From positions 124,001 to 188,000 of the IMG/VR virus record IMGVR_UViG_3300032331_003609: 64,000 nt of DNA; one strand, given 5' to 3'. The notes under the pieces are model-generated. The model ran no database searches. It saw nothing but the letters and a program-made list of their open reading frames with translations, and was not told where the DNA came from. Positions 22,947 to 49,661 of the stretch are shown here, piece by piece; the first letter of the stretch is position 1, and the number at the start of each line of letters is the position of its first letter. The translations under genes were made by a program, and so were the position numbers.

Positions 22947-24680
22947 ATGGCAGGATTCATTGACAATTTTTCACAGAGTAACCCAAACATGGGGCGTATA
23001 CTCAAAGCCGTAAGTAAAATCGGAAGCTTCGGAATGGAGTATAAAGATCTTGTTGTGAAAAATTCTCAAGCAATTGGGGTTTCAGAAGCAATGATGAGAC
23101 AAAAATTAGCATTAACAGATTCTGATGAGGATTTTATTTTTAGCCTTGCAGCTGCAGATACCACTAGTAGAAAATACATTGCTTATTTTGATAAAGATTA
23201 TCCATACAAAAGAGATTTTTTAAGAAGCTTTGCACTTAATGCCGAGATAGAATGGATTTTAGACATCCTTGCTGATGAAGCTATAGTTTATGATGACAGA
23301 AATTTTTGCTGCAGTCTATCACTGGTTAATATGGATCTAAAGGATGAAATAGCAGACTCATTGAGGGAGAACTTTAGAAAGATCTATGTCTCCCATGGAT
23401 TTAACAACGGAATTTCAGCTTGGCAGTATTTTAGACAATTTTTAATAGATGGATTTTTATCTTTTGAAATAGTTTATTCAGATGATGGAAAACAAATAGT
23501 AGGATTTAAAGAATTAGATCCAGTTTCATTGACCCCATCTGTAGAGAGAAACCCTGGAGGACAAACTGTTCAAATATGGTATCAGTACTATGGAGACAGT
23601 GTTAGAGAAAGAAAGCTATATGATGCTCAGGTCATATATGTTTCTTTTGCAAATGGTAATGGCACAAGCAGAACAAGTTATGCTGAAAGATTAATTAGAT
23701 CCCATAATCTTCTAAAGATAATGGAGCATACCAGAATCATTTGGAATGTTATGAATGCTTCTTTCCGATTGAAGATGACTATCCCGGTTGGTTCTAGATC
23801 TCCTCAAAAAGCAAAAGAGACATTAGGGGAATTGATGAACATGTATAAGGAGGATATTAAACTTAATACTGATTCCGGAGAATTAAGTATTAACGGACGT
23901 CCAAATTTACAATTTTATAAGAACTATCTTTTCCCTGTCCAAGGAGGAGAATCACCTAAAATAGAGACTATTAATAATGCAGGGCCAAACTTAAATGTTA
24001 TAGATGCTGTGGTTTATTTCTTCAATAAATTAAAAGCAGATTCTAAGATACCATTTAATAGATTCGCTGCTAGATCTGGTGGAACCGTAGGAACATATAA
24101 GATAGGAGCAGAATCTGCAGAAAGGGATGAAATCAGATATAATAAATTCATTAATAGAATTAGATCAATCTATCAAGAGATCATACTAAAACCATTATGG
24201 ATTCAGATGACTTTGGATTATCCTGAACTTGATAAGGATTCTATATTTAGATCCCAATTAGGGCTTAAATTTAACTCCGATAATCAGTTTGGTGAATCTA
24301 AAGAGATAGAACAACTAATTAAGAAAATAGATTTTATAGCAGGACTTTCTGAAATTAAAGAAAAGAAAGGCGAAGAAGAACTTCCTTATTTTAGCCAGGA
24401 TTTTCTTATAGATAAATTTTTAGGATTGACCAACGAAGATAGAAGGGTTAATAATATTTACAAGAAAAAGGAGGAGGAGGAAGGCAAAGCAGCAGCTGCA
24501 ATTTCAGGATCTGCTACACCAGCACCAGCAGGTGGAGGTGACACAGCAACTCCAGCAGCAGAAACTGGAGGCGATGAAGCAGCACCAGCAGCTGAAGCCC
24601 CTGCGGAAGAAGCACCAGCAGCAGAAGCCACACCAGCACCAGCACCAGCAGCAGCAGCAACAGAGACTGAAGCACCTTAA
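22947..24680 (+). CDS. gp20: Portal vertex protein, T4 gp20-like, paralog B with Ala/Pro/Glu-rich tail
   Basis: Same motifs as paralog A along the full length (RDEIRYNKFI.RIR); C-terminal PAAEAPAEEAPAAEA tail. Confidence 0.9.
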   Translation: MAGFIDNFSQSNPNMGRILKAVSKIGSFGMEYKDLVVKNSQAIGVSEAMMRQKLALTDSDEDFIFSLAAADTTSRKYIAYFDKDYPYKRDFLRSFALNAEIEWILDILADEAIVYDDRNFCCSLSLVNMDLKDEIADSLRENFRKIYVSHGFNNGISAWQYFRQFLIDGFLSFEIVYSDDGKQIVGFKELDPVSLTPSVERNPGGQTVQIWYQYYGDSVRERKLYDAQVIYVSFANGNGTSRTSYAERLIRSHNLLKIMEHTRIIWNVMNASFRLKMTIPVGSRSPQKAKETLGELMNMYKEDIKLNTDSGELSINGRPNLQFYKNYLFPVQGGESPKIETINNAGPNLNVIDAVVYFFNKLKADSKIPFNRFAARSGGTVGTYKIGAESAERDEIRYNKFINRIRSIYQEIILKPLWIQMTLDYPELDKDSIFRSQLGLKFNSDNQFGESKEIEQLIKKIDFIAGLSEIKEKKGEEELPYFSQDFLIDKFLGLTNEDRRVNNIYKKKEEEEGKAAAAISGSATPAPAGGGDTATPAAETGGDEAAPAAEAPAEEAPAAEATPAPAPAAAATETEAP

Positions 24681-32184: not shown

Positions 32185-32952
32185 ATGAGCGATCAAAAGA
32201 CGGGATTATTAATAAGATTTCCCCTAAGCCCAAAGAAAGGAAAAAAATCCACATACACAGTTTCTTTCTACGGCTTTATGGAAAGAAAAATAGCTGAGGG
32301 AATTAATCTGGGGTACAAATGTTTTATCTTCGAAGTATCTGACGATGATTTCGATGTCCTTGATTTTGAGGTACATGGGGATATTAGACAATCCTTAAAT
32401 TCTTACATACGGGAAGGAATAAGATTGGCAATCTATATAAAGGTAAAAAAATATCTAACATCCGATTCTATTGACGAAATAAATGAAGCACACAGTCAAA
32501 TAACTACGTGCTTGAATTTTGTTAAAAACTTTACTATATCAGATCCTCAAGAATTTCCTATCATTTTACATGTTGGAGGTGCTAAAGGGGATAGGAGAGG
32601 TACCATGGAAGATTTTTGTAAAAAAATAGAAAAATTATTTAATCCAGACGATATCCTGAGTCTTGCTGTTGTTAATGACGAGAAGCCAAGTCTTTTCTCG
32701 GTCAAAGATCTTCTTCCCGGCGTATTTTATAAAATAAGAATTCCTATAGTTTTTAGATCAACGTCATATCCAACTAATCAAGGGAACCTGACACTTAATG
32801 AATCACTATTCCTAGCAGCTTCCACGTGGAAGAGAACGATCAATCCTATTTTTGTTTACCTTCCAGGGAACACCCAAATCAACGGGGATCAAACTAAGCC
32901 ATTTGGTTTAGAATTAGATTTTGTCTTTGATAACAGATTACCCGAACCATAG
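32185..32952 (+). CDS. UV-damage endonuclease (UvsE/UVDE) homolog lacking several catalytic residues
   Basis: IILHVGGAKGD...F......LAVVNDEKPSLFSVKDL..GV...IRIPIVF aligns to UVDE, but ENDD is VNDE and DYHHH is RSTSY. Confidence 0.75.
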   Translation: MSDQKTGLLIRFPLSPKKGKKSTYTVSFYGFMERKIAEGINLGYKCFIFEVSDDDFDVLDFEVHGDIRQSLNSYIREGIRLAIYIKVKKYLTSDSIDEINEAHSQITTCLNFVKNFTISDPQEFPIILHVGGAKGDRRGTMEDFCKKIEKLFNPDDILSLAVVNDEKPSLFSVKDLLPGVFYKIRIPIVFRSTSYPTNQGNLTLNESLFLAASTWKRTINPIFVYLPGNTQINGDQTKPFGLELDFVFDNRLPEP

Positions 32953-33003: not shown

Positions 33004-33825
33004 ATGCCTGAAATCAGCGAAGTAAGAATAATGTCAGACTTTATCAATAAAGTCTCTTCTAAGGTTGACTATTTTATTGGGATCTCTAAAAACCCAGAGC
33101 ACAAAAGCAAAACAATTCTAGTTATTCCGTTTGACCATTTTCAGATTAAAGCATATTCCAGGGGAAAGGAATTGATGATTCGGTTTATAAATCTGGATTT
33201 TTCATATTCTGACATAACCGATTCTAAGCCCCTAGTTTTTACCATGGGTATGAGTGGCAACTGGAATTATTCAAAGAATATGTTTGAAATACCTAAGCAC
33301 ACACATTTTATGATTATGGGTTCTGATGGTAGTGTATTAGGAATGAATGATGTCAGAAGATTTGCCCGTTGGGATTGGCGCAGCTGGAATTCTGAAAGGG
33401 GTCATGATCCTGTTCAGGAGACAGAACTTTTTAAAAAAAATATCTTAGAAAATTTAATGAAGGACAGGGTATTTCAAAAACCTATCTTTGAAGTCATGAT
33501 GAATCAAAAATATTTCAACGGGGTTGGAAATTATCTAAGAGCTGAGATTCTGGGTAGGATAGATTTAGATCCGAGAATATCTGCTAGTGATTATATTACT
33601 CGAGCGGGAGATAAATTTTTTAATATGACAGAAAAAATAATTGTTGAATCATATGAACTTGGGGGAGGTCAATTTAAGGACTGGTATAATCAAGCAGATT
33701 TAGAAAAAAAGAAAAGTAAAGAATTTCAAGCATGGATGCAATTCTATTTCAATAAAGATAGTTGCGTTCCTATCAAAGATAAAAACGATCGTAATTTTTG
33801 GATTGATAAAAAATGGCTAATATGA
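33004..33825 (+). CDS. nei: Fpg/Nei DNA glycosylase/AP lyase, NEIL1-like, zincless finger
   Basis: True start M-P-E (catalytic Pro2/Glu3) at 33004; RGKEL, MGMSG, D.RRF.RW, H2TH FNGVGNYLRAEIL; no Cys4 finger. Confidence 0.92.
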   Translation: MPEISEVRIMSDFINKVSSKVDYFIGISKNPEHKSKTILVIPFDHFQIKAYSRGKELMIRFINLDFSYSDITDSKPLVFTMGMSGNWNYSKNMFEIPKHTHFMIMGSDGSVLGMNDVRRFARWDWRSWNSERGHDPVQETELFKKNILENLMKDRVFQKPIFEVMMNQKYFNGVGNYLRAEILGRIDLDPRISASDYITRAGDKFFNMTEKIIVESYELGGGQFKDWYNQADLEKKKSKEFQAWMQFYFNKDSCVPIKDKNDRNFWIDKKWLI

Positions 33826-34517
33826 TAAGTAAAGACACACTTAAAAAAATTCTATATTTTGATATAGAAACTGCCGGAATTAAAGAAACGTTTTCCGATC
33901 TAAAAAATTCAGATCCTAGACTTGCAAAGATTTGGGAAAAAAGATGTGTCTGGCTAAGAAAGAATTCTGGGGATGAATACAAGGAAGCAACAGAAGATCA
34001 ATTATGGGCAGACAAATCATCATTACATCCAGAATTTGCTAAAGTTGTTTGTATTAGCTTTGGAGCATATAATGGCGATGATGTTAAAATCCAATCAGTT
34101 ATAGGAGAGGAGAATGAAATTCTTGCAAATGCTAATAAGATTTTTAATAATGCAGTATCAAAAGGCTGGAAACTCGGGGGTCACACAATTAAGAATTTTG
34201 ACATACCCTTTGTTGGAAAAAGAATGATCATAAACAGAATAGATCCCTCGCCTTTGATTGGCCAATTAAACAGAAAACCCTGGGATTCTCCAGTAATAGA
34301 TATTTCAGAGATTTTTGCTTTTGGTGGATATGGCCAAACTCATTCTTCTTTGGATCTCATGTGCTCAGTCTTTGGTCATGAATCACCTAAAGATGAAATG
34401 GACGGATCTCTTGTCCATTCATATTTTCACTCAGGAAGAATAGAAGAAATAAAGAAATATTGCGAAATGGACGTTAAGTATCTTATAAAATGCTACGAGT
34501 CATTCTCTTTCGAATAG
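33813..34517 (+). CDS. DEDD 3'-5' exonuclease (PolB-exo2-like)
   Basis: FDIET, LHPEF.K..CI, GH.IKNFDIPF, SLD.M, I..YC..DV. Confidence 0.85.
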   Translation: MANMISKDTLKKILYFDIETAGIKETFSDLKNSDPRLAKIWEKRCVWLRKNSGDEYKEATEDQLWADKSSLHPEFAKVVCISFGAYNGDDVKIQSVIGEENEILANANKIFNNAVSKGWKLGGHTIKNFDIPFVGKRMIINRIDPSPLIGQLNRKPWDSPVIDISEIFAFGGYGQTHSSLDLMCSVFGHESPKDEMDGSLVHSYFHSGRIEEIKKYCEMDVKYLIKCYESFSFE

Positions 34518-35314: not shown

Positions 35315-37840
35315 ATGTCAGGAATTTACAAAGGATACAATCCTATTTTCGAATCAATGAAGCAAGAGCTTTTTGAGGAGGAAACTAAAATAGACGTAGA
35401 TGCACTTATTAGAGCTATCTACGACACTTTTGTTAACCTAATAGTTAATGGAACAGACGAGGCAGTTAAAACTCCTGATGGATTTAAAGCATACATGGAA
35501 AAGGCTTTACAAGCCAGCTCTTTAAATGGTATTCAGGCTGAATTTGAAAAAAGAATAGATTTAATGGCTGCTACTGATAAAAGTCAAGCAGAAGCATTAA
35601 ACCAATCTAGATCCTATATTGGACAATTATTCTCATCATTAAAATCTGCAGTAGGTGAAGATTCCAAAGGTCTACAAAAAGCTATAGATAAAATGACATC
35701 TTTAATGGGATCTACAATAACTAGTTTTCAATCAGTTCAGGTTGAACTTCAAAAGAACGAAAGCTTAGTTAGCAGATACTTAATGGAAGATAATGAGCAA
35801 TTAACAGGAGAGGAAGCAGATTCTGAAGATGGATTAGCAGATAAATGGTATACCCAATTATCTAAAAATCTTTTAGACAGCGCAACGTCTTTTAAAGGAG
35901 AAACAGCATCTGCCATGGCTAGCAAAAATTTAGCTGGCAATTCCGAGGTTCAGAATTTTTCTCAATCTTCTCAGCAATATCTGGAGCAAGCAAAGCAATT
36001 AGCAATATCAGGGGGTAGGAGAGGATTATTTCAAACAGGAAAACTCCAAACAGCTTCAGGTCCTATGAAAGCTAAAGATTATAGAGTAAAGGCTCAAAAT
36101 CTTGTCAATGAGATAATCAGACAAAGAGAAGAATTTAGAAAATTAAATTACAAACTATCTAATATTCCTGCACCAACAAATCCAATCGTGGTTTGCCCAA
36201 CAGGTATGGCGTTTGATGTAGCAAAAAATGCTTGCGTATTTGTTACCGTTCCTGTAGTTAATACAGGAGGAGGAGGCGGGGACACTAAACCACCAAGGCC
36301 AAAGCCAACACCAGTTACAACTGGATGTACTTTTCCAGTTGCTATAGGAGCATCTAAATGCTCGGAGGTAGCAGCACTTCAAGGTAAATTGATTAGTATG
36401 GGATCTTGTATGGCTGATATCTTAAATGCAGCAGGGGGAGCAGATGGAAGATATGGTAAAGTAACAGCTAAGTTAGCAAACATCACTTATGCTTATATGA
36501 TGAAGTCAAATTCATTTAATGCAGCAGGAGAATTAACCCAAGAAATGTATAATGCTATAATGGCAGGAGGCCAGGTAATATACCAACAGCCACCAACAGC
36601 AGTGAAAGATTCATTAGACGTTTCTAAAGTTTTAGAAAACAAAACATTTGAAAAAGAACATCAAACAGGGACACCAGTTTTATCATTTGGTGATTTCTCT
36701 AAGATCCTAACAGAAGCTGTCTATTTAACTGAAGATGCAGGTATTCCTAATACATCAAGAAGCATAGCATCTTGTATATGTTCAACATATCAATCTGGAA
36801 ATATAGATCCAAATTGCTTCTCAATTGTCCCAGTACCAGTTCCAAACCCTACAGGAGGAACAGGAGCAACAGGAGGAACAGAGCCAATACCGGGTCAAGC
36901 AGATTGGAAAGGACTTAAATATGTTAATAGTGGATCTTATCCGGTTTCATTCGACGAAAGTCTTTTAAGTTTCTGGACCAAAGAAATAATAATTGATGCT
37001 TTAACATTCTGGGCACCAGGAGGAACATACGCTCTAAAAGCAGGAGCAACGGGTCTTAAATCATTAGGTATCAAGGGAGCCTCTAAAGCTGGAATGACAA
37101 AATTAGCTACTAAATTGGCAGCTAGCGCATCAACTAAAGCAGCTACACTAGGAACTGAAAAAGTAGCTTCTAAATTAGCTAACGTTTCTGCAGGATATTT
37201 TGCTAAATATGGTAGAATTCCTATCGCAAAGAGAACAGCAGCTGGACTTCTTGGAGGAACGGTTGGTGGTGCATTCTTTGACTTCATAGCGGGAAGAGAC
37301 ACTTTTGTTATCACATCAGTAGAAGGATTTGTAGAAAGAAACATGATAATGGGAATAGCTAAGGGTCTGACAAATACACTTGATGGATACTGCAGTGATG
37401 ACGATTGGGCATGCATAACACAGGTTTTAGCTATTACTAAAGGCGGTTGGACAGTGGACGAGGATGATAAAGCAGTATCAATTTGGTCACAGCTTAAGAA
37501 ATTCTACATGGAATCAGAAGGCGAGGAATTAATAGACGATATAAAGAGTGTTAAAGCTAAATTTGGAGATGTTGAAGGATATCCTAATGTTAAATCACTT
37601 TCTCCGCTTGCAAGTGTATCTGATCTTGATTGGGATTTAGCAAAAGCTGAGACTAATAGATTTGTTGATGCTCTTGAAAGAAACGAATCTAAGCTAGCGG
37701 AAAACCTTGCTAAACTTCCTGAAAAGTACGTTCAAGCATTCGTAGAGGGTGCTTATGATGAGATTGATGAAGAAGGAGAAGCAACTTCTGCTGACGGAAA
37801 AGAAGCTCCGGAGGAAAAAGCAATAAACAAACCTCAATAA
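35315..37840 (+). CDS. 841-aa putative internal/ejection protein with peptidoglycan-binding-like motif and hydrophobic Gly/Ala segment
   Basis: YNPIFES N-terminus; EVAALQ.KL...GADG.YG..T motif; AAGLLGGTVGGAFF segment. Confidence 0.7.
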   Translation: MSGIYKGYNPIFESMKQELFEEETKIDVDALIRAIYDTFVNLIVNGTDEAVKTPDGFKAYMEKALQASSLNGIQAEFEKRIDLMAATDKSQAEALNQSRSYIGQLFSSLKSAVGEDSKGLQKAIDKMTSLMGSTITSFQSVQVELQKNESLVSRYLMEDNEQLTGEEADSEDGLADKWYTQLSKNLLDSATSFKGETASAMASKNLAGNSEVQNFSQSSQQYLEQAKQLAISGGRRGLFQTGKLQTASGPMKAKDYRVKAQNLVNEIIRQREEFRKLNYKLSNIPAPTNPIVVCPTGMAFDVAKNACVFVTVPVVNTGGGGGDTKPPRPKPTPVTTGCTFPVAIGASKCSEVAALQGKLISMGSCMADILNAAGGADGRYGKVTAKLANITYAYMMKSNSFNAAGELTQEMYNAIMAGGQVIYQQPPTAVKDSLDVSKVLENKTFEKEHQTGTPVLSFGDFSKILTEAVYLTEDAGIPNTSRSIASCICSTYQSGNIDPNCFSIVPVPVPNPTGGTGATGGTEPIPGQADWKGLKYVNSGSYPVSFDESLLSFWTKEIIIDALTFWAPGGTYALKAGATGLKSLGIKGASKAGMTKLATKLAASASTKAATLGTEKVASKLANVSAGYFAKYGRIPIAKRTAAGLLGGTVGGAFFDFIAGRDTFVITSVEGFVERNMIMGIAKGLTNTLDGYCSDDDWACITQVLAITKGGWTVDEDDKAVSIWSQLKKFYMESEGEELIDDIKSVKAKFGDVEGYPNVKSLSPLASVSDLDWDLAKAETNRFVDALERNESKLAENLAKLPEKYVQAFVEGAYDEIDEEGEATSADGKEAPEEKAINKPQ

Positions 37841-37844
37841 TAGA

Positions 37845-37852
37845 GATATATA
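37845..37852 (+). promoter_or_regulatory. Late promoter GATATATA of the protease-capsid operon
   Basis: 19 nt before ATG 37872. Confidence 0.7.
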
Positions 37853-37871: not shown

Positions 37872-39953
37872 ATGAGTCTTAACCCTGAATTCGTTTTGGT
37901 CTTGGAAAAATCTTCACATAACCTGAAGTCCGAGAAGAATGGTAACGAATATTATCTTGAAGGTATAGCAGCAGTGTTTGGTAAAGAGAATTCAAACCAA
38001 AGAATCTACGAGGAAAGAGAATATCTTCCCCATTTGCAATATTTAAAAGAAAAGATAGAACAAAAAAGATTAGTAGGTGAATTAGATCACCCTAAGGAAT
38101 TTGATGTGTCTTTAAAGAATATTTCACACCTAGTTGAAGAGCTTGCTTATGATCAAGAGAATAGAACTTTAAGAATTAAAGTTAGACTTTTAGATACACC
38201 AGCAGGTAAAATAGCTAAATCTTTAGTTGATGCTGGTATTCCAGTTTCTATCTCATCAAGAGCAGCAGGCAACGTGATGGAAAACAAAAAAGTACAAATT
38301 AAGAAGATTTTTACCTATGATCTAGTTGCTGATCCTGGATTTGAGAATGCTCAATTAGAAAGAGTTTACGAAAGCTATGGATACAATCTTAACGAAAAGT
38401 CAAAAAATGAATCCATTTTAAATGGTCTTCCTTTGATGAACGAAAGCTTAGGATTAGAAAATGATTCAAATTTTAAGATATATAGAATCAAAGATCAAGA
38501 TAAGATACAAAAGCTTCTAGATAAGGAGCCAAATAAGAGTTTAATCATGGAAAATAATTTCGTTACAGCGGAAGAAATGAATGGATATTCTAAACTAATC
38601 AAAAAAGAAATGGACACTATTAAAGGGTCTATTGAATCATTGAAAGGGATTAAAGAATCTTCCAAAATAACAGAATCATCTTCTCTTGAGGAAAGAGTTG
38701 GTAAGTTAGAAAAGTATGCTGATTATTTAGCAGAAAACCTAGAGGCATCTATTAAGTATGGTGAATACCTAGCTGAAAATTTAGAAGATTCAGTTTCTTA
38801 TTCTAAGTATCTTGCAGAGAACCTAGACAAATCTATTTCTTATGCAAAATATCTTGCTGAGCATTTAGATCACAATATCTCTTATTCTGAGTACATTGCA
38901 GAGAACGTTGACAACAACGTAACAGCAGTTAAAGGTCTAACAGAGAAAGTTGATCAATCTATTGCTTATGCAGAATATGTAGCAGAGAACGTAGACAAGA
39001 ACATTAAGTATAGCGAATACCTTGCTGAAAACTTAGATAAGAACATCTCTTATTCTGAGTATCTTGCTGAGAACGTAGATAAGAACATTTCTTATTCTGA
39101 GTACTTAGCAGAAAACCTAGATAAAGGTTTAGCTTATAGCGAATACTTAGCTGAGAAATTAGATAAGAACATTTCTTATTCTGAGTACTTAGCAGAAAAC
39201 CTAGATAAAGGTTTAGCTTATTCTGATTATCTTGGTGAGAACCTAGATAAGACAGTTCATTACAGTGAGTATATCGCTGAAAAATTAGCTAACAACATCA
39301 GCTATGCAGAATACATCGCTGAGTCTGTAAATGCAGCTTCAGGAACCGCAGAGGTAAAAGAAGCAGTAACAAAAGCAATTTCTGAAAACACAAGAACTTC
39401 AGGATATGCAGGAGATTACACAGAGATCTCTTCTAAAATTGACAATTTATTGAACACTGTCGGTAAACAAAAGACAGAAGAAATAGCAGAAAATAAGAAC
39501 TATCCTTTCTTAAAGCTTATGGGCGAACAAGGACAAAGAGAATTTTTATCACTGCACGAAGGCCAAAAACAAAAGGTCGCCAAATCCTTAAACGAAAACA
39601 ATTACTCATCCGAAAAAGAGGTAGTTGAAATTATGGGTAAAACTCTGAATGAGCAAAATCAATCCGGAGAAAAATTCCTAGATTTAATGCCAGAAAAATA
39701 CAAAACTACATGGGAGAATATGAATGAGTCTCAAAAGGCCTCTATATTAGCTCAAAGTAAGTTTCATAAATTGGATACTCCTTACCAAATCCAGAATTTC
39801 TGGGCTACAAGAGGTATTGCAGTTACCAAGGCAAATATCGAAAGAATAGACGAATCCCAAGAACAAATAACCGCAGCTCCTCAGCCAAAGGGAATATCTA
39901 GAGAATATTTAGATAATCTTTCTGAAGCTTTAGCTGTTAGGTTTAAAAAATAA
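37872..39953 (+). CDS. gp21: Prohead protease (gp21, U9 family) fused to gp22-like scaffold
   Basis: LEGIA...N.N.RIY, GELDHP, NISH, LDTPAGKIAK.L, ISSRA.G, TYDLVADPGF; then about 500 aa helical scaffold directly before gp23. Confidence 0.93.
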   Translation: MSLNPEFVLVLEKSSHNLKSEKNGNEYYLEGIAAVFGKENSNQRIYEEREYLPHLQYLKEKIEQKRLVGELDHPKEFDVSLKNISHLVEELAYDQENRTLRIKVRLLDTPAGKIAKSLVDAGIPVSISSRAAGNVMENKKVQIKKIFTYDLVADPGFENAQLERVYESYGYNLNEKSKNESILNGLPLMNESLGLENDSNFKIYRIKDQDKIQKLLDKEPNKSLIMENNFVTAEEMNGYSKLIKKEMDTIKGSIESLKGIKESSKITESSSLEERVGKLEKYADYLAENLEASIKYGEYLAENLEDSVSYSKYLAENLDKSISYAKYLAEHLDHNISYSEYIAENVDNNVTAVKGLTEKVDQSIAYAEYVAENVDKNIKYSEYLAENLDKNISYSEYLAENVDKNISYSEYLAENLDKGLAYSEYLAEKLDKNISYSEYLAENLDKGLAYSDYLGENLDKTVHYSEYIAEKLANNISYAEYIAESVNAASGTAEVKEAVTKAISENTRTSGYAGDYTEISSKIDNLLNTVGKQKTEEIAENKNYPFLKLMGEQGQREFLSLHEGQKQKVAKSLNENNYSSEKEVVEIMGKTLNEQNQSGEKFLDLMPEKYKTTWENMNESQKASILAQSKFHKLDTPYQIQNFWATRGIAVTKANIERIDESQEQITAAPQPKGISREYLDNLSEALAVRFKK
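38712..39341 (+). repeat. 15 tandem 42-bp (14-aa) repeats, consensus SYSEYLAENLDKNI
   Basis: Counted in translation from KYADYLAENLEASI to SYAEYIAESVNAAS; unit 6 is degenerate. Confidence 0.92.
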
Positions 39954-39968
39954 ACATTTTTATAGAAA

Positions 39969-41726
39969 ATGCAACTTATCAATCAACATGAAATCTATGA
40001 AACCTGGGCACCAATATTGGAAAGCAAAACAGGTATTCAAGAGAGAGGTAAATTAGACTGGTTAACTAAATACTGTCATTACCACTCATTAAACGAATCT
40101 GCCGGAGCGTATAACTCTTTAGGCGTATTAAACGGTATGGGCCAAGTATCTCCTGCTTCTAACGTAGGTTTATCTGGCGGTCCTGCTGGCTTTTATGCAG
40201 GCGGATCTTATTCTGGAACTGGTCTTGGTTCTGGCGATAAATTCCCTTCTCTTTTACCTTTAGCTATTCAAGTAGCTGCTAAAACAGTAGGTTTTGATAT
40301 CGTTCCAGTTATCCCAATGAGCGGTCCTACAGGCGTATTATCATACTTAGACTATGTTTACGCAGGTGGTAAATTATCTGGTACTGACTCTGTATCTCCA
40401 TACACAGCAAACACTCCAGATTTAATTAAAGTTCCAACAACAACAGCTTCTCCAGTTACTGGTTTAGCAGTAGGAACCACTTACCTTTTAGGTGCTTCTG
40501 GTCTTTCTTCAACAAAAGACTTAGACTCTGCAGGTGTAGGTGCTTTAGTAGCTGGTAAATTCGTCGGTAGTTCAAGAATCGATGGTTTCCCAATTTTCCA
40601 AGTGGTAGCATTAACTGTAGGTTTCTCTATTGCTGACGCAATCGGGGCAGACGCAGTTATTTACTCTGGTTCATATAATACAGGTACAAAGGTTTATACA
40701 ATCTCTGCAACAGTAGGATATGCAAACGGTGCTGCTCAATTAGTTAAAACTTTAGAAGATCACGTACAAGGATTTACTGGTTCTGGCGTTGCTAACGACG
40801 GTACATGGTCTGGTCCTTATGTAGACGGTACTAAAGCTTACGATCCAATGTCAAGAGGAACTGCAGAAGGCACTTACTTCAAGTCATTAGGTCTTTCTAC
40901 ATTCACTAAGTTTGTAGAGGCTGGTACATTCCAAGTTGCTGCTTCTGTTACAACTGAGCAAATCCAAGATTTGAACAAGCAATTCGGTATCGACGTAGTT
41001 TCTATGATCGAGAACGCACTTGTTAACGAGGTTTCTCAAGCGATCAACAAGCACATCTTATCTAGAGCATTTGCTTTAGGTTGGTCTAACCACTATGAAT
41101 TTGCAAACACCGAATTAGGTGGAGCATCTTCTGCTTCTCTAAACATCAATTTAAATATTGGTTCTGGTGGAGCTTCAACCGCATCTTTCATCGGTAAGGA
41201 CAATGGATCTTTAACAATCTATACTCCTGGCGATATTGCTACAGGCGGATACGAGAACCAATCAACTGTACAAAGAAGATTATTCTCAAGAATCTTGGCT
41301 GCTGCTAACGTAGTAGCAAACAGAGGAAGAAGAGGACCTGCTAACTTTATTGTTACTAACGCTCAGGTAGCTTCTGCTTTACAAGATATTTCACAATTCA
41401 CATTTGCTCCTTTTACAAACACGTTAACTCAAAATAACGGTACTTTATATCCAGTTGGTTCAATCGCTGGTATGACCGTTTATGTTGATCAAAACATGTC
41501 TTTTGGCGATACGAGAGTATTAGTTGGAAGAAAAGGTGCTGATGACGAACCAGGTATGAAATTTATGCCTTACATGATGGCTGAGTCAATTCAGACTATC
41601 TCTGAAGGTACAATGTCACCTAAAATTGCAGTTAAGTCTAGATACTCTTTAGTAGAGGCTGGACATCATCCTCAAACAATGTACTTATGCTTCAAAGCTA
41701 TAGTACCTGCAACTGGTATCGCTTAG
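39969..41726 (+). CDS. gp23: Major capsid protein, T4 gp23-like
   Basis: W.PIL, VGFDIVPV.PMSGPTG, Q.AA..T.EQIQDL...GID...., NF.V...VAS.L, G...G..VYVD, G.KF.PY, SRY.L; strong codon bias. Confidence 0.96.
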   Translation: MQLINQHEIYETWAPILESKTGIQERGKLDWLTKYCHYHSLNESAGAYNSLGVLNGMGQVSPASNVGLSGGPAGFYAGGSYSGTGLGSGDKFPSLLPLAIQVAAKTVGFDIVPVIPMSGPTGVLSYLDYVYAGGKLSGTDSVSPYTANTPDLIKVPTTTASPVTGLAVGTTYLLGASGLSSTKDLDSAGVGALVAGKFVGSSRIDGFPIFQVVALTVGFSIADAIGADAVIYSGSYNTGTKVYTISATVGYANGAAQLVKTLEDHVQGFTGSGVANDGTWSGPYVDGTKAYDPMSRGTAEGTYFKSLGLSTFTKFVEAGTFQVAASVTTEQIQDLNKQFGIDVVSMIENALVNEVSQAINKHILSRAFALGWSNHYEFANTELGGASSASLNINLNIGSGGASTASFIGKDNGSLTIYTPGDIATGGYENQSTVQRRLFSRILAAANVVANRGRRGPANFIVTNAQVASALQDISQFTFAPFTNTLTQNNGTLYPVGSIAGMTVYVDQNMSFGDTRVLVGRKGADDEPGMKFMPYMMAESIQTISEGTMSPKIAVKSRYSLVEAGHHPQTMYLCFKAIVPATGIA

Positions 41727-41750
41727 TATTAATTAAGTTAACCTTTAATA

Positions 41751-41780
41751 AAAAGCCTCTGAGAGATCAGAGGCTTTTTT
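41751..41780 (+). terminator. Intrinsic terminator after gp23
   Basis: AAAAGCCTCTGA-gaga-TCAGAGGCTTTT followed by further Ts. Confidence 0.9.
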
Positions 41781-41804: not shown

Positions 41805-41812
41805 GATATATA
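41805..41812 (+). promoter_or_regulatory. Late promoter GATATATA
   Basis: 16 nt before ATG 41829. Confidence 0.7.
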
Positions 41813-41828: not shown

Positions 41829-42941
41829 ATGAAGCTTATTGAAAATTTTAAATCATATAGTGATTGCAAAGAAGCATTAATAGAATCGTATGGTGATATT
41901 GATATTGCAAAAACCAAATTAATTAAAAAGGGATATTCATCGGATGATTTAGACGAAAGTTTAAATGCAATCAAAGAATCATTAGGCGATAAGATTATTA
42001 ACTTTTTTTCTAAAAATCTAGGGGGTGGTATTTCTAAAATAGACAGAATACTAAGAGATATAAAAGAAGAAGAAATTAGATTTATCAGGGACGAGCATGA
42101 AGCAGAATCTAAATTCTATAAATTAAGCACAGCACTAGGACAATTAAAAAGGGATAAAGCAGACAAGTCGGAAATGGATCAATATGTTATTAAATTGAAT
42201 AAGATTCAAAAATTAATAAGAGATTTAGTTTCTTCACACAGCTCTATTATGGATAGCCTAGAAAAACAAATAGATGTTCTAACTAATAAGAAGAATAGAA
42301 GAAGCGAGTACTATAACTTAAAAAGAGCAGAGGATGCTGTAGAGACTAAAAAACTAAGAGCAGAATTTAAAAAGAAGCTTATTAGTCAAGAAGATGATTC
42401 TGAGTACTTAAAAGATATTCAAAAGATTCTTGGAAATCCCAAAGATGCAGAGAAAGATTTAGAAAAAGCTAAGGAGAACCTAGCTAAAGAAAAAGGTGAA
42501 ATAGGAGCAAGCGACGAGGTTTCTAGAATGTCACCAGATAAGATAGAAAATATCTTGAGTGAATATCATAAAGAAATTATGGCTTCGCTCAAAGACGTTA
42601 AAGACTATACAGAAAAATCATTAGACAGGATTCAAGAGCTTTCTGATAATAAGAAAATGAATCAAGGAGCTTATAACAGTATGAAAAATACATTTGAATC
42701 TAAGATAAGTAAGATTTCTAAGTATGTTGAAGAAGCTAAGAGTAAAATATCACAAATAGGAACTTCCGATGAAGAGATAGGAGAAGATTCAAATAAAGCA
42801 ATAACTTATCTTTTGAACCTGGAAAAAGCAGTTACCAATATAAAGTATTATACTTGGCCAGCTGATGATCTTTCTAAAGAGAAAAAAGAGATTCAATCTG
42901 CTTTAGAAGTAGTAGAAGACGAAATACAAAAAGCAGCTTAA
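41829..42941 (+). CDS. Charged coiled-coil putative internal head protein
   Basis: MKLIENFKSY N-terminus; K/E-rich helical composition. Confidence 0.75.
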   Translation: MKLIENFKSYSDCKEALIESYGDIDIAKTKLIKKGYSSDDLDESLNAIKESLGDKIINFFSKNLGGGISKIDRILRDIKEEEIRFIRDEHEAESKFYKLSTALGQLKRDKADKSEMDQYVIKLNKIQKLIRDLVSSHSSIMDSLEKQIDVLTNKKNRRSEYYNLKRAEDAVETKKLRAEFKKKLISQEDDSEYLKDIQKILGNPKDAEKDLEKAKENLAKEKGEIGASDEVSRMSPDKIENILSEYHKEIMASLKDVKDYTEKSLDRIQELSDNKKMNQGAYNSMKNTFESKISKISKYVEEAKSKISQIGTSDEEIGEDSNKAITYLLNLEKAVTNIKYYTWPADDLSKEKKEIQSALEVVEDEIQKAA

Positions 42942-46743: not shown

Positions 46744-48177
46744 ATGTGTGGAATACTAATTGCTCATAATCCCTCCGAGGAAAGAATTAAGTCAATATCG
46801 CACAGGGGTATCGAATATTCCACACACTCAGATGCATCGGGATTAACCCTATGCCATCACAGATTGCCTATCCAAACAGCAATAGGTGACGGTTGGATTC
46901 AACCGGTCGAGATATCGAAAGACAAGTACCTTCTATTCAATGGCGAAATTTTTAATTATCCCACGGAGCTATATGATTCAGATACTGCGTATCTAGCTAG
47001 TCTTTTTTCTACCTGCCTAGACTTTTCATCACTTGAGATGTTTAGTGCTCTCTACGAGCCCCATATTAAGAGCTGGGATGGTTTCTGGGCTATTTGTCTG
47101 GTTGATATGAAGACAAAGAACGTTATTTGTTTTACAGACCCTCTAGGTAAGAAGTGCCTATACTATAATGATCTTGGAGAAATCTGCTCTGAAATGAAAG
47201 GACTTATTAATAGTGCTTCTTTCTTAGATAGATCCTTTATGGGCGGTGTAAGAAAATGGGGGTATGTTCCTAATGAATCTACCCCATTTGAAAACATCCA
47301 GAAGATCCGACCAAACTACTTTTATCAATGGAATTTTGCTGCTCCAGACTTCAAGAAGCTATATGGTCCCTATTTCTCATTTAAACCCCCCAAATTTGAG
47401 TTTAATTCTGAGGATGAGATGTTAGATTGGGTTTGGAACAAAGTTGAAGCAGCGACAAAGAATAGACTGTTAAGCTTGGACTATCCTATATCCATCCTGC
47501 TTTCAGGAGGTCTGGATTCATCTATCATTGGTGGGCTTCTTCTTAAGCTAGGTGCGGATGTTAGTTGGTATACCATAAACAACGGACCGGACAATGATTA
47601 TGTCAGAGAATGCGAGAATTATTGGGGTATTAAAGTAAACCAATTGGAATATACAATGAACGAAGATAGTATTAATCTGGATGAATTGTATTTTAAGTGG
47701 AATGAATCTCCTATAGATTTAGGCAGCGTGGTACCACAGTACCTGCTATTTGATGCGATTAAAAAAGGAACAGACACTAGAATAGTCCTATCAGGGGACG
47801 GAGCAGATGAAATGTTTGGAGGATATAGAAGGATAGATGAGTACGACTCACAAGGATCTGATGTTTTCCATGAATTAACATATTACCATTTACCAAGACT
47901 TGATAAAATGAGCATGGCACACACATTAGAGCTTAGAAATCCTTTTCTGAATTTAGAGCTTCTTCAAATGGCACTAAATCTTCCGATGGATTTAAGGAAA
48001 CATAAGACCATTCTTAAGAAAGCATTCAAAGGATTGGTTCCAGATTCTGTTATAGAAAGAAAAAAGCATCCATTAAAGAATGAAAGAATAGTGAAAGATC
48101 CTATGGAATATAGAATAGAAGCTATTGAAAGCTTTAAAAAGGGATACAGCGATTTTTTAGAAAGAGGAGAATATTAA
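46744..48177 (+). CDS. asnB: Asparagine synthase-like glutamine-dependent amidotransferase (AsnB family)
   Basis: N-terminal MCGI, HRG, H.RL.I, FNGEIFNY, LLSGGLDSS, LSGDGADEMFGGY, LELRNPFL. Confidence 0.93.
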   Translation: MCGILIAHNPSEERIKSISHRGIEYSTHSDASGLTLCHHRLPIQTAIGDGWIQPVEISKDKYLLFNGEIFNYPTELYDSDTAYLASLFSTCLDFSSLEMFSALYEPHIKSWDGFWAICLVDMKTKNVICFTDPLGKKCLYYNDLGEICSEMKGLINSASFLDRSFMGGVRKWGYVPNESTPFENIQKIRPNYFYQWNFAAPDFKKLYGPYFSFKPPKFEFNSEDEMLDWVWNKVEAATKNRLLSLDYPISILLSGGLDSSIIGGLLLKLGADVSWYTINNGPDNDYVRECENYWGIKVNQLEYTMNEDSINLDELYFKWNESPIDLGSVVPQYLLFDAIKKGTDTRIVLSGDGADEMFGGYRRIDEYDSQGSDVFHELTYYHLPRLDKMSMAHTLELRNPFLNLELLQMALNLPMDLRKHKTILKKAFKGLVPDSVIERKKHPLKNERIVKDPMEYRIEAIESFKKGYSDFLERGEY

Positions 48178-49661
48178 TAAAGCTCAATTCCTGCTAGAGA
48201 ATCACCTTTTGCATTAAGTGGTGAATAATCTTCTGGTTCATCCGTCAAAAGAAACGTCTTACTTGCATCGACAACTAAACCAGCTATTCCCATAAATCCC
48301 CTGTTAATTAGTATCGGAGTACTTTTGTTAGTTCTATCAACAATAGAAAATTTAACCTTCTTGTAAACCATTTCCCCGAATTCAATATCTAAAAGAATAA
48401 CTGGCCTTTTATCAGTTTGATCCCCAACTTCTGCATGGGAATATTCCATTATTCTGTTACTAAAGGATTTACCCCCAACTGTCCAATTTAAAAATCCATC
48501 AACCTCTTCTGAAAAATCTGCATGAAGAGAACACGCAATAGATCCGTTGCCAGTATCTAATTTACCTATAAATTTGCCAACCCCCTTGATATCAAAGCTC
48601 TCTCTAAATCCCACCATTTTTCGAGGATAATTCCAGTTCTTTTTATCAAGTATAAAATCTAAGATAATTCCTGTTACGTCAAGACCCGTTGCTTTTTCTA
48701 TGCCGTCAGTTCCTGGTGATGCGTTTACTTCTAAAACATATGGTATACCAGTATTTTTTCCAATAATAATATCAACACCACACCACGAGCATTCAGTTGC
48801 TTTAGCAGCTCCTATTGCTATTTTTTCTATCTCTTTAGATATTTCTACTGCCTCTGCTACCCCACCTAAAGACACGTTTGTTCTAAAGTCATTCTCTATT
48901 CTGTGTCTTTTCATAGAGGCTATAATTGTATAATCATCCCCGTCGCCTGTAGAATTTCTAGATCCAACTACGTGTATTCTTAAATCAAAGTCAGCTTCTA
49001 TTTTTTCTTGGACTATTAATTCAGTTTCTGGCGAAAGCTTCCATATTGTTTGTAAAGTTGAGAAAAGAGACGTTTTAGAATCTATCTGAAATACACCTAT
49101 TCCTTTGGTGCCGCTTAATGTTTTTACTACAATAGGGTATTTTCCCCCGATTTTACTCATAGCATTTTCTATATCATCCTCTGATGATATTAAAGCAGTT
49201 TTTGGTGTCGGTATTCCTTTTTCTTGGAGTTTTTGAACAGTGTCTAACTTATCTTCACAAAGAAGTACAGATCTTGGTGAATTCACTGATACAAATCCAA
49301 GAGATTCAAGTTTTTCAAAAAATTTAACAGCTGCTGTTGAGTTTATTGATGATCTTCTAGCAAGTATTGCTGTATTTTTAATATCAATCTCATACTTGTT
49401 GTTGCTTCCTTTATTTCTAATAAAGAAGCTTCCTGTTTCACTTTTTTCGATTTCCCCCTGCGATGTGTTAATTATGATGCATTTAAATCCTAAAGAAGTG
49501 GATTTCTCCATCATTTTTTTAACAGTTGGAGCAAGATAGTTTTTTCTTGATTCTAATTTGGTTGTAAGAATCACAAGGGAAATAGGCTTTTTTGAGCCTA
49601 TCTTTAGATTCTCAGCTCCCTGAAAAACAAAATCATCTTCTTTGGTCAATAAATTATCCAT
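48174..49661 (-). CDS. rimK: RimK-family ATP-grasp ligase fused to C-terminal retropepsin-like (RimB/ATP-dependent Zn-protease family) domain
   Basis: DKL.T...L...GIP.PKT, P.VVK...G..GIGV, DLR..V.G, FR.NVS.GG, GVDII, LEVN.SPG; then KLDTGNG...SLHA...RPVI.LD..F...FSIVDR...ILINR.FM. Confidence 0.9.
   Translation of the reverse strand: MDNLLTKEDDFVFQGAENLKIGSKKPISLVILTTKLESRKNYLAPTVKKMMEKSTSLGFKCIIINTSQGEIEKSETGSFFIRNKGSNNKYEIDIKNTAILARRSSINSTAAVKFFEKLESLGFVSVNSPRSVLLCEDKLDTVQKLQEKGIPTPKTALISSEDDIENAMSKIGGKYPIVVKTLSGTKGIGVFQIDSKTSLFSTLQTIWKLSPETELIVQEKIEADFDLRIHVVGSRNSTGDGDDYTIIASMKRHRIENDFRTNVSLGGVAEAVEISKEIEKIAIGAAKATECSWCGVDIIIGKNTGIPYVLEVNASPGTDGIEKATGLDVTGIILDFILDKKNWNYPRKMVGFRESFDIKGVGKFIGKLDTGNGSIACSLHADFSEEVDGFLNWTVGGKSFSNRIMEYSHAEVGDQTDKRPVILLDIEFGEMVYKKVKFSIVDRTNKSTPILINRGFMGIAGLVVDASKTFLLTDEPEDYSPLNAKGDSLAGIELY

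What the first reader, a model, noticed from the sequence alone, without database searches (positions are those of the whole stretch)
37872..39953. Protease-scaffold fusion with a 15 x 14-aa self-cleavable coiled-coil ruler
T4 encodes gp21 and gp22 separately; here they are one 693-aa ORF. The scaffold holds 15 double-heptad repeats (about 31 nm if a continuous helix). Nearly all contain L/I/V-A-E, matching gp21 cleavage after Glu. Several units are near-identical in DNA (39020-39250), indicating recent expansion. Repeat number could tune capsid size.
Basis: partly seen in the sequence, partly recalled or inferred. Interest (0 to 1): 0.65.

Follow-up and report, generated by a model that had tools for sequence, protein, structure and literature searches.

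The report
Protease-scaffold gene with nested scaffold
A huge phage of Bacteroidota-type hosts carries one gene that joins its head-maturation protease to a repeat-built scaffolding protein and very probably also makes the scaffold alone from a conserved internal promoter and start codon, as herpesviruses do; the number of repeats does not follow genome size.

Summary
ORF 37872-39953 (693 aa) has a T4 gp21-like protease domain with the catalytic His and Ser in place. Behind it come a helical region with exactly 15 in-register 14-aa units (residues 282-491, consensus YSEYLAENLDKNIS) and a conserved C-terminal helical domain. The major capsid gene follows 16 nt later. The protein is not a one-off. 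Over 4,000 metagenomic homologues exist, and all those examined keep the 14-aa register with 11-17 units. Independent assemblies give the same 15 units, so it is not an assembly artefact.

The ruler idea is not supported. Complete genomes of 373 and 430-434 kb both have 13 units, genomes of 635-735 kb have 11-12, and this roughly 285-kb phage has 15.

The new point is an 8-mer, GATATATA. It marks gene starts throughout this genome and is frozen at the DNA level inside the ORF (38477-38484). An invariant in-frame Met226 lies 62 nt downstream. This implies a nested scaffold-only product of 468 aa, as in herpesvirus UL26/UL26.5.

Every unit carries [L/I/V]-x-E, the T4-type cleavage motif, so dicing by the protease is plausible but untested. 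The fusion itself is already annotated in cultured relatives such as Tenacibaculum phage PTm1.

The parts
37845..37852 (+). GATATATA promoter-like motif 20 nt before the ORF's ATG
   Evidence: 18 matches in the window against 5.4 expected, and 0 of 100 shuffles reach 18; 46 sites in the 245-kb genome, 36 of them in the 7% that is non-coding, mostly 12-31 nt before an ATG; present at -12 to -36 in nearly all of the ~80 IMG/VR loci (all but a few that are cut off there).
37872..39953 (+). Protease-scaffold ORF, 693 aa (P0001)
   Evidence: phrog_207 'head maturation protease' at 1.9e-35.
37872..38342 (+). Protease domain (residues 1-157), T4 gp21-like. Catalytic His73 is at 38088-38090 and Ser128 at 38253-38255.
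   Evidence: Pfam S77 35.8 bits (cut-off 27) and S80 31 bits (cut-off 23.4). Foldseek to 5JBL: E 1e-6, probability 1.0, TMt 0.65. BLASTP to T4 gp21 aligns H73 with H85 and S128 with S140. Both residues are invariant in 42 sequences.
38343..38546 (+). Linker (residues 158-225) with conserved Glu sites VYE|S (165-168) and MNE|SLG (189-194); candidate release sites
   Evidence: Alignments. The same L-N-E|S-x-G motif is invariant in the capsid protein's N-terminus.
38477..38484 (+). Internal GATATATA inside codons 202-205 (K-I-Y-R)
   Evidence: 83 of 84 relatives use ATA-TAT here, the flanking residues vary but always give G before and (outside Mahaphages) A after; it is the only codon-frozen Ile and Tyr column among 11 and 24 invariant ones; it is one of only four syntenic sites per 8-kb locus.
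38547..39953 (+). Proposed nested scaffold-only ORF, Met226 to Lys693 (468 aa)
   Evidence: Met226 is invariant and present in all ~85 relatives. It is the first ATG after the motif and in frame in 72 of 82 relatives, at a spacing of 59-71 nt.
38715..39344 (+). Array of 15 x 14 aa (residues 282-491), consensus Y-S-E-Y-L-A-E-N-L-D-K-N-I-S
39345..39425 (+). Short variable linker (residues 492-518); long and acidic in the 635-735 kb relatives
   Evidence: Alignment; lengths.
39426..39950 (+). Conserved C-terminal all-helical domain (residues 519-693; invariant F602, P607, W614, F643, W644, R647)
   Evidence: AF2 pLDDT about 65-75. Shared with PTm1 ORF-300 (34% identity, E 3e-8).
39969..41726 (+). 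Major capsid protein (gp23 family), 585 aa. No GATATATA of its own. Predicted maturation cut at L41-N-E43|S44 (40089-40106).
   Evidence: Pfam Gp23 7.3e-39. N-terminal 48 residues nearly invariant. T4 gp23 is cut at L-T-E|A (PMC9026906).
41750..41779 (+). Terminator-like hairpin (13-bp stem then a T run) closing the protease-scaffold-capsid unit. The next GATATATA is at 41805 and the next gene at 41829.

Best explanation
The ORF encodes the prohead protease of a huge phage fused in frame to that phage's scaffolding (core) protein. The phage's genome is estimated at about 285 kb, it encodes bS21, and its gene starts lack Shine-Dalgarno sequences, as in Bacteroidota. Two products are likely. The 693-aa fusion comes from the promoter-like site at 37845. 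A 468-aa scaffold-only protein starts at Met226 and comes from a second, conserved promoter-like site embedded in the coding sequence at 38477. That second transcript also carries the capsid gene, which has no site of its own, and ends at the hairpin at 41750. This would give little protease and much scaffold and capsid protein, and the fusion would carry the protease into the core, as in herpesvirus UL26/UL26.5.

The scaffold is a long acidic helix built from 14-aa units, ending in a small conserved helical domain. After shell assembly the Ser/His protease would cut after Glu in [L/I/V]-x-E. It would free itself at the linker (VYE|S, MNE|S), trim the capsid protein at LNE|S, and probably dice the array at the YLAE|N of each unit so that the core leaves the head.

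Shown: the domain identities, the repeat anatomy and its conservation, the DNA-level constraint on the motif, and the operon layout. Inferred: promoter activity, translation from Met226, the scaffold role, and all cleavages.
For: - Protease: (family scores above cut-off, fold match, H73/S128 aligned with T4 H85/S140, invariant).
- Position and role: the capsid gene is 16 nt downstream. There is no T4-type scaffold (PF25623) in this genome or in four relatives' records, two of them complete with terminal repeats. The cultured relative PTm1 shares the protease and the C-terminal domain around a different repeat module and is annotated 'prohead core scaffolding protein and protease'.
- Repeats: strict 14-aa register in all ~200 relatives examined, 11-17 units. 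AF2 predicts a helix through residues 269-488.
- Nested product: the motif is enriched and sits before gene starts. It occurs at only four syntenic places per locus in 78 relatives. The codons are frozen only at I203/Y204. Met226 is invariant and is the first in-frame ATG downstream. A terminator follows the capsid gene and then the next motif.
- Cleavage: the T4 motif is L/I-X-E (PMC9026906). Glu7 is the most conserved unit residue at 99%, and 99% of 977 units carry [LIVM]-x-E. The ORF has 29 L/I-x-E sites against 14 +/- 3 in shuffles. LNE|SAG is invariant in the capsid protein. PTm1's unrelated repeats each carry L-S-E, and MaF61's 1404-aa homologue is studded with LNE.
Against:
- The internal motif is 62 nt from Met226, whereas most sites are 4-23 nt from their ATG.
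- In the Mahaphage relatives the internal site is degenerate (GATATATG, or lost) although the Met is kept.
- The scaffold part has no detectable homology to any named scaffold family.
- The structure models have low confidence in the array (pLDDT about 40-55).
- The test for binding of the C-terminal domain to the capsid protein gave no answer.
- P1' in the units is Asn or Lys, unlike the Ser seen at the likely capsid and linker sites.
- The high conservation of Glu7 could be structural.
Confidence: 0.6

Rival explanations
1. Plain fusion only. One 693-aa polypeptide serves as both protease and scaffold at equal copy number (as phage P2 gpO does). The internal GATATATA serves only to raise transcription of the downstream capsid gene, or has another DNA-level role.
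For: The capsid gene has no motif of its own in this clade. In Mahaphages, where the capsid gene has its own upstream ATATATA, the internal site is relaxed. The 62-nt spacing to Met226 is atypical.
Against: A transcript from 38477 would carry Met226 as its first AUG, in frame, in 72 of 82 relatives. Met226 is invariant inside an otherwise variable linker, even in Mahaphages. This genome's genes use A-rich leaders without Shine-Dalgarno sequences, so a first AUG is likely to be used.
Confidence: 0.25
2. The repeat number is a ruler that sets capsid size.
For: Unit number changes in whole units between close relatives, 11-17. Scaffold proteins are known size determinants in other phages (general knowledge).
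Against: Genomes complete with terminal repeats, at 373.5 kb and 430-434.5 kb, both have 13 units and scaffolds of 418-422 aa. Genomes of 635-735 kb have 11-12 units, and this ~285-kb phage has 15. Spearman rho is -0.82 (n = 13, lineages not independent). What lengthens in the largest genomes is the acidic linker after the array.
Confidence: 0.07
3. The C-terminal part is not the scaffold. It could be a targeting or tether region for the protease, or an internal head protein that is retained or ejected.
For: There is no homology to known scaffold families. No binding to the capsid protein was predicted (which is not evidence either way). T4 gp21 and phiKZ gp175 have C-terminal propeptides (PMC9026906).
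Against: The part is 468 aa and strongly conserved. It lies exactly between the protease and the capsid gene. It has the acidic helical composition and the dense Glu-site pattern of degradable core proteins. No other scaffold candidate of the T4 type is present in complete genomes.
Confidence: 0.1
4. The repeat array or its length is an assembly artefact.
For: Tandem repeats with an identical 42-nt pair can mislead short-read assemblers.
Against: Independent metagenome assemblies L007, L012, L008 and L011 keep the same units, including the identical 10/12 pair. The protein cluster identical to this one has 28 member sequences, and many others of 693 aa exist. Most unit pairs differ at about 40% of nucleotides, so they are easy to assemble.
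Confidence: 0.02

Closest known systems
T4 gp21 prohead protease (MEROPS S77; structure 5JBL) and the phiKZ gp175 family (S80)
   Same: Family scores are above cut-off, the fold matches, and the catalytic His and Ser are aligned. The gene lies just before the capsid gene. Glu-type motifs occur in the likely substrates.
   Different: It carries a 536-aa C-terminal extension. T4 gp21 is 212 aa and its scaffold gp22 is a separate gene.
T4 gp22 scaffolding core protein (Pfam PF25623 T4_CASP, phrog_237)
   Same: Position between the protease and the capsid gene, acidic helical character, and many L/I-x-E sites. T4 gp22 even contains KFIDHLAKEWLAEN, which resembles 1.5 units (not significant, E 0.8).
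   Different: No HMM match. gp22 has no tandem 14-aa array and is translated from its own gene.
Herpesvirus UL26/UL26.5 (assemblin-scaffold fusion with an internal promoter; conserved across Herpesvirales, PMC11565193)
   Same: A protease of the same structural superfamily at the N-terminus, fused in frame to the scaffold. There is an internal promoter-like element and an in-frame internal start, which would give a 3'-coterminal scaffold-only product.
   Different: The promoter is a phage 8-mer. Expression here is inferred from sequence conservation only. The scaffold is repeat-built. Common descent of the arrangement is not shown.
Tenacibaculum phage PTm1 ORF-300, 'prohead core scaffolding protein and protease' (BBI90692.1), and uncultured huge phages LR756500-LR756504 and LR745206
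   Same: The same three-part plan and the same neighbouring capsid gene. The huge-phage proteins carry the same 14-aa units (11-12 copies).
   Different: PTm1 has a different 16-aa repeat (IEKWIKTDFTKELSEG-like). The Mahaphage versions have long acidic linkers and a degenerate internal motif.

Membership tests
Peptidase S77/S80 (T4 gp21-like prohead protease) | Profile match above the curated cut-off | tested here: met
   PF03420 35.8 bits (cut-off 27); PF20034 31 bits (cut-off 23.4); phrog_207 1.9e-35
Peptidase S77/S80 (T4 gp21-like prohead protease) | Assemblin-like fold | tested here: met
   Foldseek to 5JBL: E 1e-6, probability 1.0, TMt 0.65. The model's domain pLDDT is only about 70.
Peptidase S77/S80 (T4 gp21-like prohead protease) | Catalytic His and Ser at the T4 H85 and S140 positions | tested here: met
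   H73 and S128 align with a constant offset of 12 and are invariant in 42 sequences. The third catalytic residue was not assigned.
Peptidase S77/S80 (T4 gp21-like prohead protease) | Cleavage after Glu in L/I-x-E | not testable with these tools
   Only motif evidence; the motif comes from PMC9026906.
T4 gp22-type scaffold (PF25623 / phrog_237) | Profile match of the C-terminal part | tested here: not met
   No hit at E up to 1. BLASTP to gp22 gives E 0.68.
Nested protease/scaffold gene (UL26/UL26.5, lambda C/Nu3 type) | Protease fused in frame upstream of the scaffold | tested here: met
   Single ORF in the window and in about 200 relatives
Nested protease/scaffold gene (UL26/UL26.5, lambda C/Nu3 type) | Separate expression signal inside the ORF | tested here: inconclusive
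   The gene-start motif GATATATA is frozen at the DNA level at 38477. Promoter activity was not measured.
Nested protease/scaffold gene (UL26/UL26.5, lambda C/Nu3 type) | In-frame internal start codon used for a scaffold-only product | tested here: inconclusive
   Met226 is invariant and is the first in-frame ATG after the motif in 72 of 82 relatives. Translation was not testable.
Canonical left-handed coiled coil | Hydrophobic residues at heptad positions a and d throughout | tested here: not met
   The conserved hydrophobic positions are 1, 4, 5, 9 and 13. In heptad terms these are a, d, e and then b, f. A helix is predicted but at low confidence. Oligomer state was not tested.

The most novel reading that the evidence does not exclude
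The protease-scaffold ORF of this very large group of environmental huge phages uses the same expression logic as all Herpesvirales: an assemblin-type protease fused to the scaffold, with an internal promoter giving excess free scaffold. If so, the arrangement predates the split of tailed phages and herpesviruses, or has been reinvented in detail. The scaffold would also be a modular array that dices itself, with each 14-aa unit carrying its own cleavage site.
Probability: 0.3. Interest if true: 0.7.

Novelty: new variant of a known kind. Interest (0 to 1): 0.5.

Why it matters
How capsids for genomes of 0.3-0.7 Mb are assembled is poorly known, and no scaffold has been defined for these environmental huge phages. 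This gene family has thousands of members and gives a clear candidate with testable sites: two promoters, one internal start, and one cleavage motif per unit. It links T4-type head maturation to the herpesvirus expression strategy. The comparison across relatives also removes an attractive but wrong idea. Unit number is evolutionarily labile, but it does not scale with genome length.

Tried and rejected
Copy number was judged from independent assemblies instead.
- Near-identical DNA in the phage collection: none.
- Binding of the scaffold C-terminal domain (505-693) to the capsid protein: complex prediction gave 'no answer' (score 0.01). This is not evidence either way.
- Fold of the C-terminal domain: AF2 pLDDT 65. 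No meaningful PDB match (best Z 5.1 over about 50 residues). BFVD returned only homologues.
- ESM Atlas feature search of the scaffold part: no usable hit.
- Pfam hits in the array (PSCyt2, LTI65_PGEED, DUF6468, DUF7603): below cut-off and treated as repeat or composition noise.
- Homology to T4 gp22: not detected.
- The 841-aa ORF upstream (35315-37840) could not be shown to be the portal.
- Literature search for the promoter motif and for repeat-built scaffolds in huge phages: nothing specific.
- Sigma-70-type promoter scan: fewer sites than in shuffles, so uninformative.
Full report
**1. The observation**

ORF 37872-39953 on the + strand is open and encodes 693 aa. Residues 282-491 (window 38715-39344) are 15 consecutive 14-aa units with no insertion or deletion. 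The first units are YADYLAENLEASIK, YGEYLAENLEDSVS and so on. One unit is degenerate (unit 6, AVKGLTEKVDQSIA). A position matrix built from the units scores every copy above 8 bits, whereas shuffled proteins never exceed -6. Tandem Repeats Finder also sees periods of 42, 84 and 126 nt. Thirteen units have [L/I/V]-A-E and all fifteen have [L/I/V]-x-E.

At the DNA level only units 10 and 12 are identical (42/42), and units 8 and 11 share 37/42. The median pair shares 26/42. The array as a whole is therefore old, with some homogenisation in its centre.

**2. What the protein is**

The N-terminal 160 residues match Pfam Peptidase_S77 (35.8 bits, cut-off 27), Peptidase_S80 (31 bits, cut-off 23.4) and phrog_207 'head maturation protease' (1.9e-35). 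An AlphaFold model built on 42 sequences is weak overall (mean pLDDT 54), but its protease domain (about 70) matches T4 gp21, PDB 5JBL, with Foldseek E 1e-6, probability 1.0 and TMt 0.65. BLASTP against T4 gp21, taken from NC_000866, aligns His73 with the catalytic His85 and Ser128 with Ser140. Both residues are invariant in the family.

The next gene, 16 nt downstream, is a gp23-family major capsid protein (Pfam Gp23, 7.3e-39).

The part behind the protease consists of:
- a linker (residues 158-225);
- a helical region that includes the array;
- a short variable linker;
- a conserved all-helical C-terminal domain (519-693).

This part matches no named family, including the T4 scaffold family PF25623 and phrog_237. 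Calling it 'gp22' is therefore a statement about position and likely function, not about homology. No PF25623 gene exists in this genome or in four relatives' records, two of them complete with direct terminal repeats and two linear records that CheckV rates 99-100% complete. That leaves this region as the only visible scaffold candidate.

**3. Where it comes from and how common it is**

The window lies in a 244,850-bp IMG/VR virus record that CheckV rates 86% complete, so the genome is roughly 285 kb. The best matches in the phage collection are the uncultured huge phages LR756500-LR756504 and LR745206 (462-735 kb). They match over the full length at 34-43% identity. The Lak megaphages match in the protease domain only, and the capsid protein points the same way.

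IMG/VR holds at least 452 relatives, and the 80 best are full length at 50-98% identity. The large protein database holds at least 4,351 homologues of the scaffold part, almost all of them 650-710-aa fusions carrying the S77/S80 domains.

Gene starts in the window have A-rich leaders without Shine-Dalgarno sequences, and the genome encodes a ribosomal protein bS21. Both features fit the freshwater huge phages of Bacteroidota described in PMC9723584.

Cultured relatives already carry the annotation. Tenacibaculum phage PTm1 ORF-300 (564 aa) is named 'prohead core scaffolding protein and protease' and sits before its capsid gene. It shares the protease (38% identity, E 2e-27) and the C-terminal motif (34%, E 3e-8) with this protein. 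Between them, however, it has a different repeat of about 16 aa.

**4. The repeat array across relatives**

In all 85 loci and in the 115 full-length database hits the array keeps a strict 14-aa register. Unit numbers run from 11 to 17, mostly 13-15. Over 977 units from 73 proteins the most conserved positions are Glu7 (99%), Tyr1 and Tyr4 (97%), Ala6 (90%), Ile13 (88%), [LIV]5 (100%) and [LV]9 (96%). Position 12 is Asn, Gly or Ser.

In heptad terms the hydrophobic residues fall on a, d and e in the first heptad and on b and f in the second, with an acidic c/g face. That is not a canonical two-stranded coiled-coil pattern. It suggests a helix with two alternating contact faces. AlphaFold draws long helices (269-388 and 398-488), but at pLDDT 40-55.

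The flank units are orthologous position by position, even at 62% identity. For example, unit 4 is YAKYLAEH.D.NIS in the window, in L014 and in L016. Those relatives also have 15 units. The 15-unit state is therefore not a recent expansion.

Close relatives at 66-89% identity nevertheless have 11, 12, 13, 14 or 15 units, with protein lengths differing by multiples of 14 aa. Whole units are evidently gained and lost often, within narrow bounds.

Four independent assemblies keep the same units and the identical 10/12 pair. The cluster of proteins identical to this one has 28 member sequences. An assembly artefact is excluded as far as can be judged without reads.

**5. The ruler idea**

IMG/VR end classes and sizes were obtained for 15 relatives.

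| Genome | Size | Units |
|---|---|---|
| Complete, direct terminal repeats | 373.5 kb | 13 |
| Complete, direct terminal repeats | 430.1 and 434.5 kb | 13 |
| Linear records | 343-349 kb | 13 |
| Estimated | about 272 kb | 13-14 |
| This phage (estimated) | about 285 kb | 15 |
| Huge phage genome | 462 kb | degenerate array of about 9 |
| Huge phage genomes | 635-642 kb | 11-12 |
| Huge phage genome | 735 kb | 12 |

The two size classes of complete genomes (373.5 kb and 430-434.5 kb) have the same scaffold length of 418-422 aa. Spearman rho between unit number and genome length is -0.82 (n = 13; the lineages are not independent, so this shows only that no positive trend exists). What is longer in the largest genomes is the acidic linker behind the array.

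**6. A nested gene**

The 8-mer GATATATA occurs 18 times in the window, against 5.4 expected, and no shuffle of 100 reaches 18. It occurs 46 times in the 245-kb genome. Thirty-six of those sites lie in the 7% of the genome that is non-coding, and most lie 12-31 nt before a start codon on the same strand. No conserved upstream element accompanies it. This resembles the compact T4 late promoter (my comparison, from general knowledge).

One site precedes this ORF, at 37845. The capsid gene has none. A strong hairpin followed by a T run comes after the capsid gene at 41750-41779, and the next site (41805) and gene (41829) follow that. This layout reads as one transcription unit.

A further site lies inside the ORF at 38477-38484, within codons 202-205. 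In 78 IMG/VR relatives the motif occurs at only four syntenic places per 8-kb locus:
- before the upstream 841-aa ORF;
- before this ORF;
- at +605 to +650 inside this ORF;
- after the capsid gene.

At the internal place 83 of 84 relatives use ATA-TAT for Ile-Tyr, although ATA makes up only 22% of Ile codons and TAT 65% of Tyr codons in these genes. The preceding residue varies (K, Q, M, R), but its codon always ends in G. The following residue varies (R, K, N, S, T), but its codon begins with A. As an internal control, of 11 invariant Ile columns and 24 invariant Tyr columns in the alignment, only Ile203 (41/41 ATA) and Tyr204 (41/41 TAT) are codon-frozen. The constraint therefore acts on the DNA or RNA, not on the protein.

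Sixty-two nt downstream lies Met226 (ATG at 38547). It is invariant in an otherwise variable linker. It is the first ATG after the motif, and in frame, in 72 of 82 relatives, at a spacing of 59-71 nt. In the other ten relatives the earlier ATGs lie within 15 nt of the motif.

The simplest reading is an internal promoter and an internal start that produce a 468-aa scaffold-only protein together with more capsid mRNA. The full-length fusion would supply a smaller amount of protease tethered to the core. This is the arrangement known for herpesvirus UL26/UL26.5, where the scaffold transcript is about ten times more abundant than the fusion transcript, and which is conserved across Herpesvirales (PMC11565193). 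The herpesvirus protease shares its fold with gp21 (PMC9026906).

Two caveats apply. The 62-nt leader is longer than at most sites. In the Mahaphage relatives, whose capsid genes have their own upstream ATATATA, the internal site is degenerate or lost although the Met remains.

**7. Cleavage**

T4 gp21 cuts after Glu in L/I-X-E and degrades gp22 into fragments that leave the head (PMC9026906). T4 gp23 is cut at L-T-E|A.

Here the capsid protein has an invariant H-S-L-N-E|S-A-G-A-Y at residues 39-48. The linker behind the protease has M-N-E|S-L-G and V-Y-E|S. These are good candidates for maturation and self-release sites.

Each unit has Y-L-A-E|N, and the ORF holds 29 L/I-x-E sites against 14 +/- 3 in shuffles. 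PTm1's unrelated repeats each contain L-S-E, and the 1,404-aa homologue in Flavobacterium phage MaF61 is studded with L-N-E. Degradable, Glu-site-rich core modules therefore look like a shared design. None of this has been tested biochemically, and Glu7 could be conserved for structural reasons.

**8. Verdict**

The sequence observation is confirmed.
- Right: a protease fused to a probable, probably degradable, repeat-built scaffold, with a labile unit number.
- Wrong: the array as a capsid-size ruler, and the 15 units as a recent expansion.
- Missed: the probable nested scaffold gene.

The fusion as such is already annotated in cultured phages. I did not find three things described in the papers searched: the strictly phased 14-aa array, its bounded copy number across thousands of huge-phage genes, and the conserved internal expression signal. 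I file this as a new variant of a known kind.

The read and RNA checks could not be run. The complex prediction gave no answer. The C-terminal domain has no recognisable fold match.

Noticed in passing
window, 18 sites (e.g. 7514, 17401, 21328, 29022, 34534, 37845, 41805, 53464; minus strand 49679, 50350); whole genome 46 sites: GATATATA is a compact gene-start motif. 36 of 46 sites are intergenic in a genome that is 93% coding, and the ATG usually follows 4-23 nt after the motif, in some cases close enough for leaderless mRNAs. It is probably this phage group's (late?) promoter. No upstream element is conserved.
   Followed up: partly
G000:C1:18962-19114 (outside the window; locus L087): The phage genome encodes a ribosomal protein bS21 homologue (PF01165, 47.8 bits). 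This links it to the bS21-encoding huge phages of Bacteroidota described in PMC9723584. Here the gene is far from the capsid module.
   Followed up: no
G000 positions 24150 and 32265 (outside the window): Two GATATATA sites are followed by a shared sequence (aaaaaatcctcattccgt...) with no ATG within 45 nt. These may be small non-coding RNAs or long leaders.
   Followed up: no
window 35315-37840 (+): An 841-aa ORF sits directly upstream, in the position where a portal gene would be expected. It has no Pfam or PHROG hit and no BLASTP similarity to the PTm1 portal protein.
   Followed up: partly
window 46744-48177 (+), 48174-49661 (-), 32185-32952 (+), 33813-34517 (+): Auxiliary genes near the head module: an asparagine synthase-like gene (PF00733), a RimK-like ATP-grasp gene with a weak Zn-protease tail (PF08443, PF05618), a UvdE-like UV endonuclease, and a 3'-5' exonuclease.
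   Followed up: no
G002:C1:54179-54589 (relative with a 430-kb genome): A second, stand-alone protease-like ORF of 155 aa matches residues 20-153 of the protease domain (28% identity, E 1.4e-4), in addition to the fusion gene.
   Followed up: no
L090:3492-5186 (Tenacibaculum phage PTm1 ORF-300) and L092:93-4307 (Flavobacterium phage MaF61 ORF140): PTm1 has a different repeat of about 16 aa (IEKWIKTDFTKELSEG-like) in the same place, each copy with L-S-E. MaF61 has a 1,404-aa protease-led protein with more than a dozen L-N-E sites, which looks like a polyprotein.
   Followed up: partly
L089:3618-4427 (T4 gene 22), residues 88-101: T4 gp22 contains KFIDHLAKEWLAEN, which resembles one and a half units of the array (K-Y-x-D-Y-LAEN...EYLAEN). 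BLASTP E is 0.8, so this is a lead only. A profile-profile comparison of the two families was not done.
   Followed up: no
L001, L002, L003, L005 (huge phages of 635-735 kb): The linker between the array and the C-terminal domain is 100-190 aa long, acidic or Gln/Ala-rich, against about 30 aa here. Post-array length correlates with genome size (rho 0.66, n = 13, driven by one clade).
   Followed up: partly
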